A DNA stretch of 64,000 nt from Basidiobolus meristosporus CBS 931.73 (Eukaryota > Fungi > Basidiobolomycota), in NCBI GenBank assembly GCA_002104905.1, contig MCFE01000040.1, forward strand, positions 1 through 64,000, read 5' to 3'. The position numbers and the translations under genes are program-made. The notes beneath the pieces were generated by a model that saw nothing but the letters and a program-made list of their open reading frames with translations, ran no database searches and was not told the DNA's origin. Below, one piece after another: positions 46,853-62,879 of the stretch (position 1 is its first letter; every line of letters begins with the position of its first letter).

Positions 46853-48090
46853 GACATGAGTGCTAAGGCTTTCGCGAAATCGTAAACGCTAGGAATATTA
46901 ATCACGGATTTTTGGTCTATTCAAATCTTAGAAGAACCTCTTCTGTAATAGTATCGTCAACTTGACACTCATCAAAAGCATCCCGTTGGCATCGCACACC
47001 CCAACAAAGTCAATCTTTTTGCTACTAACTAATCCTCCCAATAACATACCTATTCAAATATCCCTTACCATCCTAATGTATTCTATACAACGGCCTTTCG
47101 CAGAACTTTTGTAATAACCAGCCCCTTCTGTATACAAACACGCCCCTGCTATACAAGAATGAACGCCTCGGTTTACTGATAGTGTTGTAGTGTATTAGGT
47201 TGGGCAGTGGCCTGGACCAGCGAAGACCTAGGCAGTGTGTGGCATGGCGCGCAATTGAGGCCTATGCATAGCATATTTTTTTCAAGCCGAAAGTGAACCA
47301 CTTCACAAATGCTCTAGCCATCCGATGCTGGCGAGCGGCTATGCTGAGAGCTGGTTTTCGGCAATGCCAGCATAGACTGAAACATATGGGCACATATATT
47401 ATGTACACCTCTACCTCAAACACCTTCAACGCCCTATTGATCAGCCAAAAAGTATTGGTTGTCTACCGATCCAAGGAATCTGTGGGTTGACCAAAAATAG
47501 TGGCTCTGCTACTGATCTCTGAGCGATAAGACTAGCGGCCATGTAAGCGCCCTGCGTTGTTTAACCACCTAGCCAGTCTTTGCCATGTGTACGTATTTGT
47601 CAATCTCTTCGTCATGTCACGGGTCGGCTTACATACGGAGCCTCAGGTGTACCAAATTACCAGGAAGACGGCGAACAACCCACTGGGATCCCGAATTGGC
47701 ATCCATCGTGTACTAATGCGATTATAGATACTCCCTCCTCTACATGCATTGCGACCTTATTGGTTCGGAATAAGATACAAGACGAAGAGCTACTCAGGGA
47801 TCCGAACACCGTCCTATCTATTTCCGCATTCGCTCAAATTGTCGCAGGAGAGTGGTGTTAGTGACTGGCTTGACCGCAATGGTTTCCATCTGGATTTGGA
47901 TTTGGTGTTTAAAATAGGATAAAAATCTTTATTAGGATTATGCCGCACGATTCATAATGGAACTGGCCAAATATAGGCTTGGATCAGAGGAAACAGTAAT
48001 AATGATGAAATGGGGATATATCGGGTCGAGGGACCAATGAGCTGCTTGACTCGGTTGATCAAAAAGGGTTCCTATGAAAACTTATGTTTC

Positions 48091-49943
48091 TCAAAAATTT
48101 TCTGAGAACAGATGTCAGGTTAGCCACTCGTCCACAATGAGCCAAGCATCCTCCCAGCTTACCTTTGTTGTAGTAGAATTTGGTTCCTTCCTCTTGCGGC
48201 TGATTATACTTATTGCAATACATATGAAGCTGCTTTCCTAATGGTTTGGGGCCACAGAAGAAAACTCCGACATCGGTGGCTGGATGGTGATGGCATAGTC
48301 CATTGAATATGTGGTCGAGGTTGGGGCGACCATAATGAGTTGGTGAGCGTAGGCCAGTCAAAGCGTCCTGGTAGCCCTCTTCATCATTGATGATTACGTT
48401 GCGTACTTCATCCGGCTTCAGCCCCCCGGTCAGGTACGTGTGGATCTCGATGAATTGCTCGATATCCTCCTCTTCGATGGCTTTCAACAAGTCCTGGAAC
48501 CATTCAAAGGCCTAGCAGAGGGATTTAGTCTTTGGCGTCTTCCTGTCTGACTTCACACCTCGCATTTTACCTCTTTGTCACGGCAAATCCAAAAGAAGTA
48601 CACCTTGCGGAGTCGGGTGGCTTTCATAGGATAGTTCACCCGATACCTAATGGTGGCGAATTAGAAAGACTGCAGCACACTAGCGAGTAGAATACCACGA
48701 TACTCTACCAAATTGACTTCAGAACCGAGGCGAAAGGAGTGACACCAATCCCGGCTCCGACTAATACGGCAACCTCGTAATTGAACACGTCCTCGCTGGC
48801 GGAGCCGAAGGGCCCATCGATCATGACTCGGGGCAATATTCTATTCACGCCAGCTTTCGGGTCTATCGAGTTCGGCTTCTTCGAGTCCACATCGCATCCC
48901 AAACGCCTGGCAAACTCTCTGGTGAAGTTCCCTACAACTCGAATGTGCACCGATATGTAGTCTTCCTCGGGGGCAGAGGTCAGAGTGAACGGATGAAACT
49001 GATAAAGGGAGACCTCTGGGCAACATAGAAAGATGTATTGGCCAGCCTTCGACCGGATGTAGTCTTTTTTGATTTGCACCTCAACCACCTTGCTCGAGTG
49101 TAGAACCACCTTGGAGATGAACGTGCGATGCCGGCCTTTCACCTCCCTTATGATCCTTTCTAGGAGGTAGAGTAGTCCGGAAGCTATCCAGTATTTCCAA
49201 AAAGAGCCCCCCGAGCTGCAGTATGGCGGCCTATCTGGCTTGATCAAGCAAAAGGTTCCGTGCATCGAGAAAAACCCAAAGTAGACGCCAAACAGATGGT
49301 GTGTGTACCAGAATACCTCGAAGTACTTCCGTCGCACGCGGTGCACCGCCGTCGCTACAAGCAGTATTAGCGAAGCTAGCATGGTGTGGCCAGTCCACCC
49401 GGGTCCCGTCACAAATGCATACCAGAGCCAGCCGTGAGGCGCATCGGTAAGAGATGCTGCAATATAGAAGTTGACATAATGTGCACCGGTATGGACTAGA
49501 GTAAAGAACAATATCGACCAGCCAATCATTTTATGGAACGCGACATTTTTATCGAAGGGGATTACTTTGTTCAATGGTGTGGTTCTTAACCAAGATATCA
49601 AATTTCTACACATGGGAAAGAGCACAATCCCAGTGTCAACATGCAATACTAATGCCGAGGCTCTTGCCACCGCGAATGTTAGGCCGAAGGTGGTCCGGGA
49701 ATTGGAAAAATTATCACCAAACCAATAATTCACGAATGCTAGGGAGAATATCAGGAACTGAATAAACACCCATAATCCAAAGAAAATCACTCGCTGGCCT
49801 AGTGGTGAACCATTGTTAGTACATGATATTGGCCGATATCGCAGTTACACAGTACCATCATTGACCATCCACACATCGAATTTCTGTTTCCATGTAGGCT
49901 TGGACAGCGCTACTGGCGGATACGACTGATATGGGTTCAACAT
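48091..49943 (-). CDS. noxA: NADPH oxidase catalytic subunit, NoxA/gp91phox type
   Basis: WMVNDG start region, heme histidines (LHVD, FHKMIG, VHTGAH, YTHH, SMHG), FAD site HPFTLTSAP, IDGPFG, GAGIGVTPFAS, VGVFFCGP, and a final micro-exon giving KENF* at 48091. Confidence 0.95.
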
Positions 49944-56399: not shown

Positions 56400-57240
56400 A
56401 TGTCCAAGCAGGATAATTCGGTATTGCTACAACAATTCTCCAACCAACCATTCACCGTAATGGGGCCTAACGATATCGAGCTGAAATCCGAGTCTTTCGC
56501 ACAGTCGCTGTTTCCTAATGGTATTCTAGATACCGATTGACTCATGTCATGGCTTTTTTGGCTAACATTGTCCTCCTAATGCCAGAATCGGATCTTTTCA
56601 ATTATGCTCCTACGGCGACTTCAGGGAATATCTATGGTGTCGACTTTAACTGTAACTGCTGGACACCGCTGGATTCACCCGCAATCTCATCGTCTTCAGA
56701 TAATGGACTTTTGGAGATTCAAGAATACAGTAAAGAGGCATACGAGCAGGCATCTGGATGTACTCGTAAACGGTCAAGGCAGTCGTTCTCTGAAGAAAGC
56801 GAGACCTACTCCGACGGTGGTGAGGAGCATGGGTAAGTGGTTGGTTTAGGAGGTTTATGAAGAACATGATGTTGAGATGGCCTGTGTATCTTAGTGTTTC
56901 AAACGCCGAGATGAAGCGCCAGGTCCATATCCAGTCCGAGCAAAAACGAAGAGCTCAAATCAAGGATGGTTTTGAGGAGTTGAAGAAGCATCTTCCAAAT
57001 TGCTCGAATAAGAAGATCAGCAAGGCTTGTATCCTCAGTAAAAGTAAGTCGCTTCATGTGATCAATAGATGAGGTTAGTTTTTTAACCTTCTCTTAGCGG
57101 TTCAGCATTTACAAAGTATGAAAGGTGCGCAGCTAGCTCTGATGACTCAGCTTCAGCTGATCCGCTCAGAGAATGCCAAACTGCGCCAGTTTTACCAAGC
57201 GGTGCAACAGCGACAGGCACAGGATAAACTATTTCCCTGA
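56400..57240 (+). CDS. bHLH-leucine-zipper transcription factor (Ino4/Yas2/Mlx-like), 4 exons
   Basis: HIQSEQKRRAQIKDGFEELKKHLP...ISKACILSK-AVQHLQSM followed by a heptad L/Q zipper. TATAAATA near 56278. Confidence 0.88.
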
Positions 57241-57878
57241 AGCATTTCATATATCTCTGAATCCATCCTAATACACTGGCTCTCGCTGTTCTTCCATATT
57301 AATGTCAATCAGCAAATAGAGATATCGCTGTACCATATTATCTCCAGTGCTCATCCACAGTTCATGGTTGTGGGGCCAGCACAATAGGTTCCTAGATACG
57401 CAGCAGATTTCTCCTGTAGGGGCATATTTCTTGTTCGTTAAGAGCTTGTACCATATTCAACTTAATATACTAGTTATTTTCCAACCCAACCAGCTGTTTG
57501 ATCCATGTATATTCTGTATCAAGTGATTTTCACTCAACACATCGTAGAGCGTGCCGAAGAGAGGGTACTGCTATCTACCAGGGAACCCTACTGACTGCGT
57601 CGTGGCGCATGCCAGTATCTACGGTATTGAAGGCAAAGCCACGCTTTACATTTTCCTGGTGCTCAGGTCTACTTCTATTGAACTCACTAGTGGGAAGGGT
57701 GGATTGAAATATAACATCCGACTAATATCGATTTGATACTGATATGCTGACAAGTGGATGTACGCATAAATAAATGATGTTTACTGAAATAATCCGTACA
57801 AAGCATTAGTCGTTAGTATGACTTGACTCGTTCTCTGCTCTCAAAGCATTTCGTAAGCGACTCAGTCTCTGCCCGATG

Positions 57879-59765
57879 TCAAACTGATTTCAATTCCAAA
57901 TTTGTCGGATCAACAGTCAGAGTTTCGGGGTTTAGTGTCTTCAAGTATACCATGTAATCCGGAAGCTCACTTGAAGACCGCGATGCCCAATCGGTGGACA
58001 GGTTTACTTCGAGGCTCCTGGCTATCTCAGGACCAGTTTGACTTCGATCAGCGCTCGTAGCGACTTCATCCAGTCCCGCGCATTCAAGTACCAAGTTGTT
58101 GCTTTCCGCTTTGACCCCTTTGCCTGTTTGTCGATCGGGATGGATTTCACCAGAGACTGCGCAAACGAATGTCAATTTCCACTATGCGGATGAATTTTGG
58201 TAAATGAAAGTACCTGGCGTTCTGGTGGTTTCGCATTTCTCTTCATCTTGAGAAATTTCGTACTTGAATGAGTAAGTATCCAAAGATGCTGGTGCGTCCT
58301 GATCAATCGGGAAACCAGGGCGGTGTATGACGGATGTCTTTCCGACTGGTGTCATATGCTGGTTTGCTACTACTGTTTTTCCACATCCCCCAGAAGATAA
58401 AGGACAGATTGTGCTCATATTCTTGTCGGTTGCAGGACGACTCGCAAGGTTGGTATTAGTCATATCTCCGATACGACTGTTTGTATCCATGGATCTTGTA
58501 ACCTTTTCAGCCTTTGTTGAACTTCTAATACTGGGGATGGCGTGTGATCCTGAGCTTTGACTGCCCAGTATATCATCACAGACGGCCCAGTTTTCACGTA
58601 GGCGATTCAATGGCTGCTCACATGAAGATGGATATGCTCCAGCGAGTGAGTGACCAAATTTAGCTTGGGATGTATCTAAGCTGCTTTTGGGTACACCTGA
58701 AATCGCATCGTCCATCAGATATGGACTCGGGCTATTGTCAGGACTAAAGGAGCCTTCCCTCTCGCTGTCTACCGATGAAATTGTGAATGGTGATCCTGAG
58801 AACGAGCCCTGCTCAGACCTGACCGCAGAGGTGTGGTTGCTAGTAAATTCAGAAGCAAAGTTGCTCGTAGGAGAGTCTGCTGAAATGGGTGTCTTGCCGG
58901 TGGAGTAGTCATGGAAATTGGTTGGTGTGTGGATTTTGGTTCGCATCCGCTTGTTTGCAAACCAAACGCTCACTTGTTTATAATCCAACTTGCACAATCT
59001 ACTAAGCCTCTCCTTTTCAGTCTCACTAGGATATGGGGACTTGCGAATAAACGAATCGATTAGAATCTTCTTGATTTCCTTGGAAAACCTTGCGGGCGTT
59101 CTATTTGAGCCAGAGTTTTTTTCAAGGTTCAGGAGTTGATCAATACCATGACGAGTCAGATTTTCCACTGCCGAGCTGAAATACATCTTGGTCAGATCGA
59201 AGCCTTCGTTAAGCTCCGTAAGTATTCGGGACAGCGACAGGTCAAATATGGGTATAGCCTTCAACTGCCTAGCGATGATAGCTTTTCGTTGGTTGTTCAT
59301 GAAATACAGTGTTTCTATCCCTTCTCGAGTGGCACTTTTCGATAGCTCCCACATACTGTCAATCTTCAGATTGGTAGTGATACGACGCTTCTGTAGTGTT
59401 TGCTGTTCATCAGATTGAGTTGCAATGGCCGGCTCCCGGCTTACTAGGGTTGACAATGGCGTATCGGATTCACCAATTGCTGCGTCAAATATTTGTTCAT
59501 TTGGAGGGGCGAGAAATAGTGGGTGATATGGATGATGGTGAAGATGCTGTTCCATCATTTGGCATCGCCAGCTCACAGAGTTCAGGAAAGAAAATGGTTC
59601 TTTGTTGGTATCAATGGGCGAAAACCCCTGGACAGCATCCACCAGCCTTTGGGACATCTGGCTTAGGATGAGCATACGATTCCGTATGCCACATTCACAT
59701 CTATTATGAATCATGATGCTGGTGCATCCTTCACATTTCGGAGGATTGGGATCCAACAAAAGCAT
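57879..59765 (-). CDS. Homeodomain transcription factor, PBX/TALE-like, with a PBC-B-like segment; 2 exons
   Basis: Homeodomain at about 59105-58932: RFSKEIKKILIDSFIRKSPYPSETEKERLSRLCKLDYKQVSVWFANKRMR. A 57-nt intron 58213-58157 joins the two ORFs. The 5' end is not certain. Confidence 0.88.
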
Positions 59766-62039: not shown

Positions 62040-62879
62040 TCAGAGCTTCAGGTTTTCCTGCAGCTCCAGGTGGATCTTGGCTTTGTTTTGCGATGAGCGC
62101 GTTTTTTTGTGGTGCTTTAGTTTGTTCGCAAGTTTGATCAGCTTATTGACGCCAAATATCTCCTTGAATGAGGGTAGATCTTCTTGTATGAATTCTGCGG
62201 GTGGGGCAACCCTACTGTCCTGTGGATCATTTTGACTGACAGAGAAGAACTTTAGCTCGGCTTCAGGGACCGAAACGATTTCAACAACCGGCTGCTTAGT
62301 TGGGATCGCGAGGCTAACATCGGTCCACTCTGAGTTCTGTGGCTTGATCCTGGGGTTGGTAGCTTTAAGGGCTTTTAGGCGGAGAAATACTTCCTGGTAG
62401 TTCACCAACTCCAGAGGGATGTAGAGGGACTTTTTCAAGTGGAGGTTATCGGACCATATCTTGTTGATTCTTTTCAATTCATCCGTGTTAACACCATAGA
62501 GCAGTGCAATTCCTGCCAATGTGTCAGTGTCCTTAATCCGGTGCACAATGACTCGCTTTTCCTGTAACTCAAGTGCAAGTGAAGAGGATGAGGAGAAATG
62601 GGAGGAAAGAGCATCCTCTATCTCGGAGGCGATGTCATCTTCTGTCTTTTGGCGTCTGATAGGAACAAATGGAAAGGACGAGTTAAGAAGCGGATCGGTA
62701 GTGGTCTCCGTAGTGTTTTTCCTACGCAATTGGCGATTTCCAATCTGGTCAGGTATGAAGTAACTAGGTTGAAAAGGCTGGTGCTCAAACACACCCGGCT
62801 CCATGAAGCCTTGGAAATCCATGTTGTTCTCCAAATCATTAGAGAAATGAAGTGATGAGAAGGCAACCGCGGCGCACAT
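62040..62879 (-). CDS. Intracellular single-LysM-domain protein
   Basis: VHRIKDTDTLAGIALLYGVNTDELKRINKIWSDNLHLKKSLYIP fits the LysM consensus. No signal peptide. Start may be 62879 or 62822. Confidence 0.85.
   Translation of the reverse strand: MCAAVAFSSLHFSNDLENNMDFQGFMEPGVFEHQPFQPSYFIPDQIGNRQLRRKNTTETTTDPLLNSSFPFVPIRRQKTEDDIASEIEDALSSHFSSSSSLALELQEKRVIVHRIKDTDTLAGIALLYGVNTDELKRINKIWSDNLHLKKSLYIPLELVNYQEVFLRLKALKATNPRIKPQNSEWTDVSLAIPTKQPVVEIVSVPEAELKFFSVSQNDPQDSRVAPPAEFIQEDLPSFKEIFGVNKLIKLANKLKHHKKTRSSQNKAKIHLELQENLKL

What the first reader, a model, noticed from the sequence alone, without database searches (positions are those of the whole stretch)
57879..59765. PBX/Extradenticle-like homeodomain protein with a PBC-B-like domain in a fungal genome
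Seen: the homeodomain C-half SPYPSETEKERLSRLCKLDYKQVSVWFANKRMR parallels PBX as I recall it ([33 protein letters not shown]). Just upstream (about 59283-59165), IIARQLKAIPIFDLSLSRILTELNEGFDLTKMYF aligns without gaps to the PBX PBC-B core [34 protein letters not shown], with Q, PI, R, F and M identical and hydrophobic positions kept, in the same position relative to the homeodomain. The TALE loop is shortened: one extra residue instead of three. Established: PBC domains mediate PBX-MEIS heterodimerisation in animals, and described fungal TALE proteins (Cup9/Tos8, alpha2, HD1) are not usually assigned one. Inference: a retained ancestral opisthokont PBX-class factor, implying a PBX/MEIS-type heterodimer system in an early-diverging fungus that might connect to HD1/HD2 mating-type factors.
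Basis: partly seen in the sequence, partly recalled or inferred. Interest (0 to 1): 0.85.

Follow-up and report, generated by a model that had tools for sequence, protein, structure and literature searches.

The report
PBX-like homeodomain gene in Basidiobolus
This is a real, conserved Basidiobolus transcription-factor gene whose DNA-binding homeodomain clearly resembles animal PBX/Extradenticle, but I could not show that the helical domain in front of it is a PBX "PBC-B" domain.

Summary
The gene is real. It lies on the minus strand at 59765-57879. It probably has two exons and a 57-nt intron that holds the only in-frame stop, giving a 609-aa protein. Its relatives are all from Basidiobolus: two paralogues sit in duplicated LysM-HD-bHLH segments.

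The homeodomain is TALE-derived. It matches Pfam Homeobox_KN and has the PYP motif, but its loop has one extra residue rather than three. Among solved structures it is by far closest to Exd/PBX1 (55 bits, against 32 or less for every other class).

Directly upstream is a ~100-aa two-helix domain (probably a hairpin) under purifying selection.

Sequence homology to PBC is not demonstrated:
- Pfam PBC gives no hit.
- An exhaustive profile search of 1.84 billion proteins finds no PBX.
- Unanchored hhalign gives a probability of 0.3%.
- Only tests anchored on the homeodomain are nominally positive (p about 0.007-0.02), and not for the paralogue.

PBC-A and the PBX fourth helix are absent, and there is no second homeobox gene in the window.

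Verdict: the PBX-like homeodomain is supported, and the PBC-B homology is an open lead. Another reader of this scan noted the PGK-linked paralogue on other DNA of this genome (s1-209634).

The parts
57879..59765 (-). Whole gene, ATG to TGA. The proposed spliced product is 609 aa.
   Evidence: The ORF is and the splice model and translation. The start is conserved with P0002.
58214..59765 (-). Exon 1, covering the N-terminal region, the two-helix domain, the homeodomain and the Ser-rich region
58157..58213 (-). Proposed 57-nt GT..AG intron in phase 1. It contains the only in-frame stop (TAG, 58184-58182) and a TTGAC branch-like motif.
   Evidence: The B. ranarum orthologue has an annotated 62-nt intron at the like place, with the same ATTGAC motif near its 3' end. 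There is no RNA evidence.
57879..58156 (-). Exon 2. It encodes a C-terminal tail with a motif shared with P0003 (...DW.SRS...DY.VY.KT...LTVDP..L.LK) and ends in the TGA stop.
   Evidence: tblastn of the tail against L001 gives 45% identity over 80 aa, E 3e-16. See also the alignment.
59658..59738 (-). N-terminal Cys/His motif (C11-x2-C14-x5-H20-x2-C23-x-C25 plus RNRMLILSQ), conserved with paralogue P0002. It is not PBC-A-like.
   Evidence: Alignment A1. No Pfam hit. hhalign of the whole pre-homeodomain region against the PBX pre-homeodomain region finds nothing.
59259..59411 (-). Predicted long helix 1 of the pre-homeodomain domain (residues 119-169)
   Evidence: AlphaFold2 model md78e95561831, helix 20-70 of the piece, pLDDT about 70-94. 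Invariant block in A1/A2.
59115..59252 (-). Predicted long helix 2 of the pre-homeodomain domain (residues 172-217)
   Evidence: helix 73-118. pN 0.17 against pS 0.77 versus the B. ranarum orthologue.
59178..59279 (-). It spans the turn between the two helices.
58926..59108 (-). Homeodomain of 61 residues (220-280). It is TALE-derived with a one-residue loop extension, the PYP motif, and WFANKRMR in helix 3.
   Evidence: Pfam, PDB searches and alignment A6
58725..58805 (-). Conserved Ser/Pro-rich motif after the homeodomain (SFSGSPFT.SS..S.R..SFSP), present in all three full-length family members
   Evidence: Invariant columns in A1

Best explanation
This is a functional, Basidiobolus-restricted transcription-factor gene of the TALE homeodomain lineage. 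Its homeodomain is a divergent PBC-type (PBX/Exd-like) domain whose helix1-helix2 loop has been shortened to a single extra residue. It binds DNA through that homeodomain (inferred from the family).

The conserved ~100-residue domain of two long helices directly in front of the homeodomain most likely folds as an antiparallel hairpin. It most likely serves as a protein-protein (dimerisation) module, with itself, with its paralogue or with an unknown partner. That is the role PBC-B plays in PBX (inferred by analogy, not shown).

Whether this domain descends from PBC-B/PBL or is a lineage-specific analogue is unresolved. I put descent at about 0.4.

The gene exists as two old paralogues in duplicated LysM-HD-bHLH segments. 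It is not a standard PBC-class member.
For: Homeodomain: Pfam Homeobox_KN 45 bits against a cut-off of 24. Exd/PBX1 score 55.6-43.9 bits against the family profile; the next best are NANOG 32, MATa1 31, TGIF 27 and MEIS 24.5.

Selection and conservation: pN/pS is 0.174/0.771 for the two-helix domain and 0.028/0.962 for the homeodomain, against the B. ranarum orthologue. Start, tail and intron place are conserved.

Two-helix domain: two helices of 51 and 46 residues, pLDDT 85-94 in the core. Exd PBC-B modelled the same way gives helices of 46 and 45 residues.

Distribution: only Basidiobolus relatives were found.

Synteny: LysM-HD-bHLH is kept at both B. ranarum loci.
Against: - No expression data: no RNA run was listed.
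- The deposited gene model stops at the TAG, so the intron is inferred.
- No dimerisation test was possible.
- The AlphaFold2 alignment has only four sequences, and the homeodomain part of the model has low pLDDT.
- I could not inspect model coordinates, so the packing of the two helices against each other is inferred from a two-residue turn and from matches to helical hairpins.
- I could not search other fungal genomes with the homeodomain alone at full sensitivity. Closer fungal homeodomains than PBX may exist.
Confidence: 0.55

Rival explanations
1. One reading: a true PBC-class (PBX) orthologue retained vertically from the opisthokont ancestor. Its upstream domain is a homologous PBC-B/PBL domain that heterodimerises with a MEIS/KNOX-type TALE.
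For: - The PBC-like homeodomain stands out by more than 20 bits.
- Anchored ungapped test: 31/2000 (window protein) and 14/2000 (P0003) shuffles reach the observed score.
- Anchored hhalign extends 109 columns. Only 3/200 column shuffles reach its sum of posterior probabilities.
- The turn between the helices and the helix lengths match the Exd model.
- PBC-homology TALEs are reported across Amorphea, and fungi were sampled only as two chytrids (PMC6219170).
Against: - Pfam PBC gives no hit for any family member.
- The exhaustive pre-homeodomain profile search finds no PBX.
- hhalign without the homeodomain gives a probability of 0.3%. For Smith-Waterman, 201/500 shuffles reach the observed score.
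- The anchored hhalign score gain is under 1 SD, with 19/200 shuffles reaching it.
- Paralogue P0002 lacks the P, the F and the signal (320/2000).
- Helix 1 is not aligned at all.
- There is no PBC-A, a one-residue rather than three-residue loop, A50 rather than G50, and no fourth helix.
- No partner was found: there is one homeobox in 64 kb.
- The shuffle null ignores helical periodicity, so the p-values are optimistic.
Confidence: 0.3
2. An HD1-type (TALE) mating-type-like factor. The N-terminal helices would be the HD1/HD2 dimerisation region, as in Basidiomycota or the Rhizophagus MAT-like locus.
For: The layout (helical N-terminal domain, TALE-type homeodomain, Ser-rich tail) is also that of HD1 proteins (my own knowledge). 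A weak Atlas feature hit includes a Basidiomycota cluster with Mating_N in 15% of its members, score 0.77. Another reader read the PGK-linked paralogue this way (s1-209634).
Against: - There is no second, divergently transcribed homeobox gene in the window or beside P0002 or P0003.
- There is no Pfam Mating_N hit.
- Both paralogues occur together in one B. ranarum assembly, and their flanking genes are as diverged as the homeobox genes (62-88% aa). These are therefore old duplicates, not idiomorphs.
- MATalpha2 is not among the 60 best solved-structure matches, and MATa1 lies 24 bits below Exd.
Confidence: 0.07
3. A PBX gene acquired horizontally from an animal host or prey. It then diverged rapidly, losing PBC-A and part of the loop.
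For: The family is seen only in Basidiobolus, a gut-associated fungus, and its nearest known homeodomain is animal PBX. Basidiobolus is reported to be rich in horizontally acquired genes, though from bacteria (PMC10386755).
Against: Identity to animal PBX homeodomains is only about 51%, while those are nearly invariant among animals. PBC-B is not detectable. The gene sits in ordinary fungal synteny that was duplicated before the split of two Basidiobolus species. No animal-like flanking sequence was seen.
Confidence: 0.05
4. A decaying gene: the TAG is a true nonsense mutation and the tail is a relic.
For: The deposited model ends at the TAG (P0001), and no RNA data are available.
Against: A frame-preserving 57-nt GT..AG intron encloses the TAG exactly where the orthologue has an intron. 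The 92-codon tail stays open and conserved. There is strong purifying selection upstream. Even with a true stop, the two-helix domain and the homeodomain would be intact.
Confidence: 0.03

Closest known systems
Animal PBC class (PBX1-4, Extradenticle, CEH-20)
   Same: The homeodomain sequence is about 51% identical, sharing FSK..IL in helix 1, PYPSE, a Cys in helix 2 and QVS.WF.NKR.R in helix 3. Two long helices (46-51 and 45-46 residues) lie directly before the homeodomain, and their turn aligns at Q-x4-P-I.
   Different: There is no Pfam PBC match and no PBC-A. The loop extension is one residue rather than three. Position 50 is Ala rather than Gly. Seven extra residues lie between the two-helix domain and the homeodomain. 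There is no fourth helix after the homeodomain. The protein also has an N-terminal Cys/His motif and a long Ser-rich C-terminus.
PBL (PBC-B-like) domains of non-KNOX TALEs in algae, Naegleria, Acanthamoeba and unicellular holozoans (Joo et al. 2018, PMC6219170)
   Same: These are non-animal TALEs with a very divergent helical domain in front of the homeodomain. That domain is proposed to mediate heterodimerisation, and its similarity to PBC-B is weak and confined to the second half, as here.
   Different: That paper found no such domain in fungi, but it sampled only two chytrids.
Fungal TALE classes (Cup9/Tos8, MATalpha2, basidiomycete HD1)
   Same: They are fungal, TALE-derived and carry the PYP motif. 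HD1 proteins also have an N-terminal helical dimerisation region.
   Different: Those classes have the full three-residue loop. MATalpha2 is not among the 60 best solved-structure matches. There is no adjacent HD2 gene.

Membership tests
TALE superclass homeodomain | Three-residue extension between helices 1 and 2 | tested here: not met
   There is a two-residue gap against Exd and 52 residues over 51 Pfam Homeodomain positions. That is one extra residue, in all four family members.
TALE superclass homeodomain | Homeobox_KN profile match with the PYP motif after the loop | tested here: met
   PF05920 scores 45.4 bits against a cut-off of 24. SPYPSE is invariant in the family.
PBC class (PBX/Exd) | Homeodomain sequence nearest to PBC homeodomains | tested here: met
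   Exd/PBX1 score 55.6-43.9 bits, against 32 or less for every other solved homeodomain. Identity to animal PBX is about 51%. Only solved structures and PBX were compared; no full tree was built.
PBC class (PBX/Exd) | PBC domain (Pfam PF03792, PBC-A plus PBC-B) N-terminal to the homeodomain | tested here: not met
   There is no PF03792 hit at E<=10 for the protein, its pre-homeodomain part, P0002 or P0003. hhalign of the pre-homeodomain region against the PBX pre-homeodomain region gives a probability of 0.3%. No PBX appears in the exhaustive profile search.
PBC class (PBX/Exd) | PBC-B second-half similarity in register with the homeodomain | tested here: inconclusive
In controls, shuffles reach the observed value in 19/200 cases for score and 3/200 for the sum of posteriors. 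For the anchored ungapped test the counts are 31/2000, 14/2000 and 320/2000 for the three proteins.
PBC class (PBX/Exd) | Gly at homeodomain position 50, and a fourth helix after the homeodomain | tested here: not met
   Helix 3 reads WFANKRMR, with Ala at position 50. The model's helix 3 ends at K178/I179 of the modelled piece and is followed by a Pro-containing coil. That these features define PBC is my own knowledge.
PBC class (PBX/Exd) | Heterodimer with a MEIS/PREP (MEINOX) partner | not testable with these tools
   Only this 64-kb window could be read, and it holds one homeobox. The scan's notes on this genome mention no MEIS or KNOX gene.
Fungal HD1/HD2 mating-type pair | Adjacent, divergently transcribed HD1 and HD2 genes | tested here: not met
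   There is a single homeobox in the window. The neighbours are LysM and bHLH genes here and in B. ranarum.

The most novel reading that the evidence does not exclude
The Basidiobolus family is a genuine fungal survivor of the ancient PBC/PBX-group TALE lineage. Its two-helix domain would then be a PBC-B/PBL heterodimerisation domain, pairing with a MEINOX-type TALE or with its own paralogue. That would fill the 'not from Fungi' gap in the proposed pan-eukaryotic TALE heterodimer system. It would also give a possible link to fungal HD1/HD2 mating factors.
Probability: 0.3. Interest if true: 0.8.

Novelty: new variant of a known kind. Interest (0 to 1): 0.5.

Why it matters
TALE homeodomain heterodimers (PBX-MEIS in animals, KNOX-BELL/GLX in plants and algae) are argued to date back to the first eukaryotes. 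Fungi are the conspicuous gap: the one survey that looked found no PBC-homology there, but it sampled only two chytrids (PMC6219170).

A fungal gene with a clearly PBX-like homeodomain, and a conserved two-helix domain exactly where PBC-B sits, is a concrete and testable candidate for closing that gap. If the domain proves unrelated, the gene is still an unusual TALE derivative with a one-residue loop. It also shows that a helical module directly before the homeodomain can arise or diverge beyond recognition.

The PBX likeness is not entirely new. NCBI's automatic annotation already names the B. ranarum paralogue 'Pre-B-cell leukemia transcription factor 1'. I found no paper that discusses it.

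Tried and rejected
- **Word-indexed search with the homeodomain region alone.** It gave only 10 candidates, all Basidiobolus. It could not rank other fungal homeodomains.
- **Route used to reach PBX proteins.** I aligned the protein with a 36-residue Exd piece copied from the output. That search is seeded by Exd words, so its hit list does not show that PBX is the nearest family.
- **ESM Atlas feature and structure look-ups and Atlas and PDB fold searches of my model.** These returned only generic helical hairpins or homeodomains. The Exd PBC-B+HD model itself gets no Atlas hit, and no PBC domain has a solved structure. These negatives carry no weight.
- **Metagenome scan.** It found three TALE genes with the same WFANKRMR motif (L003-L005). 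They have the full three-residue loop, and their upstream domains are unrelated both to PBC-B and to the Basidiobolus two-helix domain. They do not bridge the two.
- **BLASTP alignments that run from the homeodomain into PBC-B.** They use two different registers seven residues apart and add almost no score. I did not count them as evidence.
- **MAT-idiomorph idea.** Rejected, because the flanking genes are as diverged as the homeobox genes.
- **RNA evidence.** No run was listed.
- **TALE-wide tree.** Not built. I had no tool-derived sequences for MEIS, TGIF, IRX, KNOX, BELL, Cup9 or HD1, and I did not type any from memory.

Full report
**Gene and organism**

The minus strand carries a 527-codon ORF from the ATG at 59765 to a TAG at 58184-58182. 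The same frame continues after that single stop for 98 more codons, to 57879.

The product of this tail matches the C-terminus of a Basidiobolus ranarum protein (P0003). The match shows in the alignment and by tblastn (45% identity over 80 aa, E 3e-16).

A 57-nt GT..AG intron at 58213-58157 encloses the TAG and keeps the frame, giving a 609-aa protein. The B. ranarum gene has an annotated 62-nt intron at the corresponding place. Both introns carry an ATTGAC motif near their 3' ends.

The deposited model (P0001, 510 aa) looks short at both ends. No RNA run was listed, so splicing and expression are inferred.

**Relatives and synteny**

A search of 5.8 billion proteins found only three relatives: the gene's own model and two B. 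ranarum proteins. P0002 is 54% identical and is automatically named 'Pre-B-cell leukemia transcription factor 1'. P0003 is 50% identical.

A B. meristosporus fragment (P0004) appeared later. The genome is therefore a Basidiobolus, which agrees with earlier notes of this scan.

The B. ranarum loci read LysM - RPE - HD - PGK - HLH (P0002) and HD - bHLH (P0003, on a contig truncated at its end). The window reads LysM (62043-62879), the homeobox gene, then bHLH (56537-57250).

The flanking proteins are 62-88% identical between these loci, about as diverged as the conserved core of the homeobox proteins. This points to two old paralogues in duplicated segments, not to mating-type idiomorphs. The window gene is the orthologue of P0003: the two are 76% identical over residues 100-285, against 61% for P0002, and they share the tail.

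Synonymous sites are saturated between the species, while pN is 0.17 in the two-helix domain and 0.03 in the homeodomain. Both parts are therefore under purifying selection.

**The homeodomain**

Pfam gives Homeobox_KN (7e-12, 45 bits against a cut-off of 24) and Homeodomain (2e-11).

Against all solved structures the best matches are Exd and PBX1. With the single sequence their E-values are 1e-8 to 4e-6. With a four-sequence family profile they score 55.6-43.9 bits. The next classes are NANOG at 32 bits, MATa1 at 31, TGIF at 27, PKNOX1 at 25.6 and MEIS at 24.5. MATalpha2 is not in the top 60.

Identity to animal PBX homeodomains is about 51%. The alignments show a two-residue gap against Exd in the helix1-helix2 loop, so the domain has 61 residues. 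This holds in all four family members.

Three caveats apply. Solved structures do not cover Cup9/Tos8, HD1, KNOX, BELL or IRX. My word-indexed search with the homeodomain alone reached only Basidiobolus. I could not build a TALE-wide tree.

**The upstream region: structure**

Residues ~109-215 are strongly conserved in the family. AlphaFold2, given only a four-sequence alignment, predicts two long helices at residues 119-169 and 172-217, with pLDDT of 85-94 in the core. An 11-residue linker and the homeodomain follow. The two-residue turn, and matches of this region to helical hairpins, suggest that the helices pack as an antiparallel hairpin. I could not inspect the coordinates.

Exd PBC-B plus homeodomain, modelled the same way from 22 PBX sequences, gives helices of 46 and 45 residues joined by a 7-residue loop at SRTRPIT. 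The second helix runs straight into the homeodomain.

The two proteins therefore share an architecture: two long helices directly before the homeodomain.

Fold searches could not test this further. Only generic hairpins were returned. The Exd model itself finds nothing in the Atlas. No PBC domain has a solved structure.

**The upstream region: sequence statistics**

The ungapped alignment has six identities and scores 27, and it is the best of 41,580 34-mer pairs.

Every unanchored test is negative:

| Test | Result |
|---|---|
| Pfam PBC (PF03792) on the protein, its pre-homeodomain part, P0002 and P0003 | no hit at E<=10 |
| Profile of the pre-homeodomain region against 1.84 billion representatives | only Basidiobolus kin and one spurious giant protein |
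| hhalign, pre-homeodomain region against the PBX pre-homeodomain region (PBC-A plus PBC-B) | probability 0.3% |
| Smith-Waterman score against shuffles | 201 of 500 shuffles reach the observed score |
| Best ungapped 34-mer against shuffles | 90 of 1000 shuffles reach the observed score |

With the homeodomain as an anchor the picture is marginal. When the upstream columns are shuffled, the results are as follows:

| Measure | Observed | Shuffles reaching it |
|---|---|---|
| hhalign score | 98.5 (shuffle mean 97.7, SD 1.0) | 19 of 200 |
| Sum of posterior probabilities | 76.7 | 3 of 200 |
| Aligned columns | 109 | 4 of 200 |

An ungapped test limited to diagonals within +-10 of the anchor gives 31/2000 for this protein and 14/2000 for P0003. 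These two are not independent, since they are 70% identical in this region. Paralogue P0002 gives 320/2000 and lacks the P and the F.

Further points against the similarity:
- Helix 1 is not aligned at all.
- BLASTP offers a second register seven residues away. This is typical of amphipathic helices, and it means that shuffle nulls flatter the result.
- A natural control, another TALE family from metagenomes with an upstream helical domain, shows no extension.

**What it is**

I conclude that this is a functional TALE-derived transcription factor with a PBC-like homeodomain and a conserved two-helix domain in the place of PBC-B.

The most likely mechanism is DNA binding by the homeodomain, with partner choice or dimerisation through the two-helix domain. 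That is inference from the anatomy; nothing here shows it.

Membership of the PBC class fails on tested defining features:
- no PF03792 match,
- no PBC-A,
- one loop residue rather than three,
- Ala50,
- no fourth helix.

'Works like PBX' remains plausible. I put homology of the two-helix domain to PBC-B/PBL at about 0.4. I put the full reader scenario (vertical retention plus a MEIS-type partner) at about 0.3. The HD1 mating-type, animal-transfer and pseudogene readings are each unlikely, for the reasons given under the rival explanations.

**Literature**

Joo et al. [quoted passage not shown] Their fungal sample was two chytrid genomes (Table S1).

Hudry et al. 2014 place PBC and Meis from Amoebozoa and Filasterea to Metazoa (PMC3957477).

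I found no paper on Basidiobolus homeobox genes.

The candidate is therefore new to the literature as far as these searches reach. Automatic annotation has already attached the PBX name to the paralogue.

Noticed in passing
window 56537-57250 (+); L001 2851-3699; L002 10462-11315: A multi-exon bHLH gene (Pfam HLH 5.9e-12, weak bHLH_INO2) lies tail-to-tail with the homeobox gene here and at both paralogous B. ranarum loci. The HD-bHLH pair has therefore survived a segmental duplication.
   Followed up: partly
window 59658-59738 (-), residues 10-36: A Cys/His motif (C-x2-C-x5-H-x2-C-x-C followed by RNRMLILSQ) is conserved between the window protein and paralogue P0002. It may bind zinc. It has no Pfam match.
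   Followed up: partly
window 58157-58213 and 59715-59765: The deposited gene model (P0001, 510 aa) starts at Met18 and ends at the TAG inside the proposed intron. It probably lacks 17 N-terminal and about 92 C-terminal residues.
   Followed up: yes
L003 931-3711, L004 1686-2759, L005 1555-3201: Metagenome contigs (JAAUYG..., JAAUXT...) encode TALE proteins with the same WFANKRMR helix-3 motif but a full three-residue loop. L004 and L005 share a conserved upstream helical domain of unknown kind, with no Pfam match beyond the homeodomain.
   Followed up: partly
window 62043-62879 (-) and 48059-49790 (-): A LysM-domain gene is syntenic with the LysM gene of L002 (62% aa identity). An NADPH-oxidase/ferric-reductase-type gene (Ferric_reduct plus FAD_binding_8) lies further along.
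   Followed up: partly
P0111 residues 165-238 (Exd PBC-B): Exd PBC-B weakly matches the helical hairpin of nucleoporin Nup58/45 in the PDB (E about 0.009). Some PBX entries also carry a precomputed PF15967 hit. This fits PBC-B being a plain helical hairpin and shows how unspecific such similarity is.
   Followed up: no
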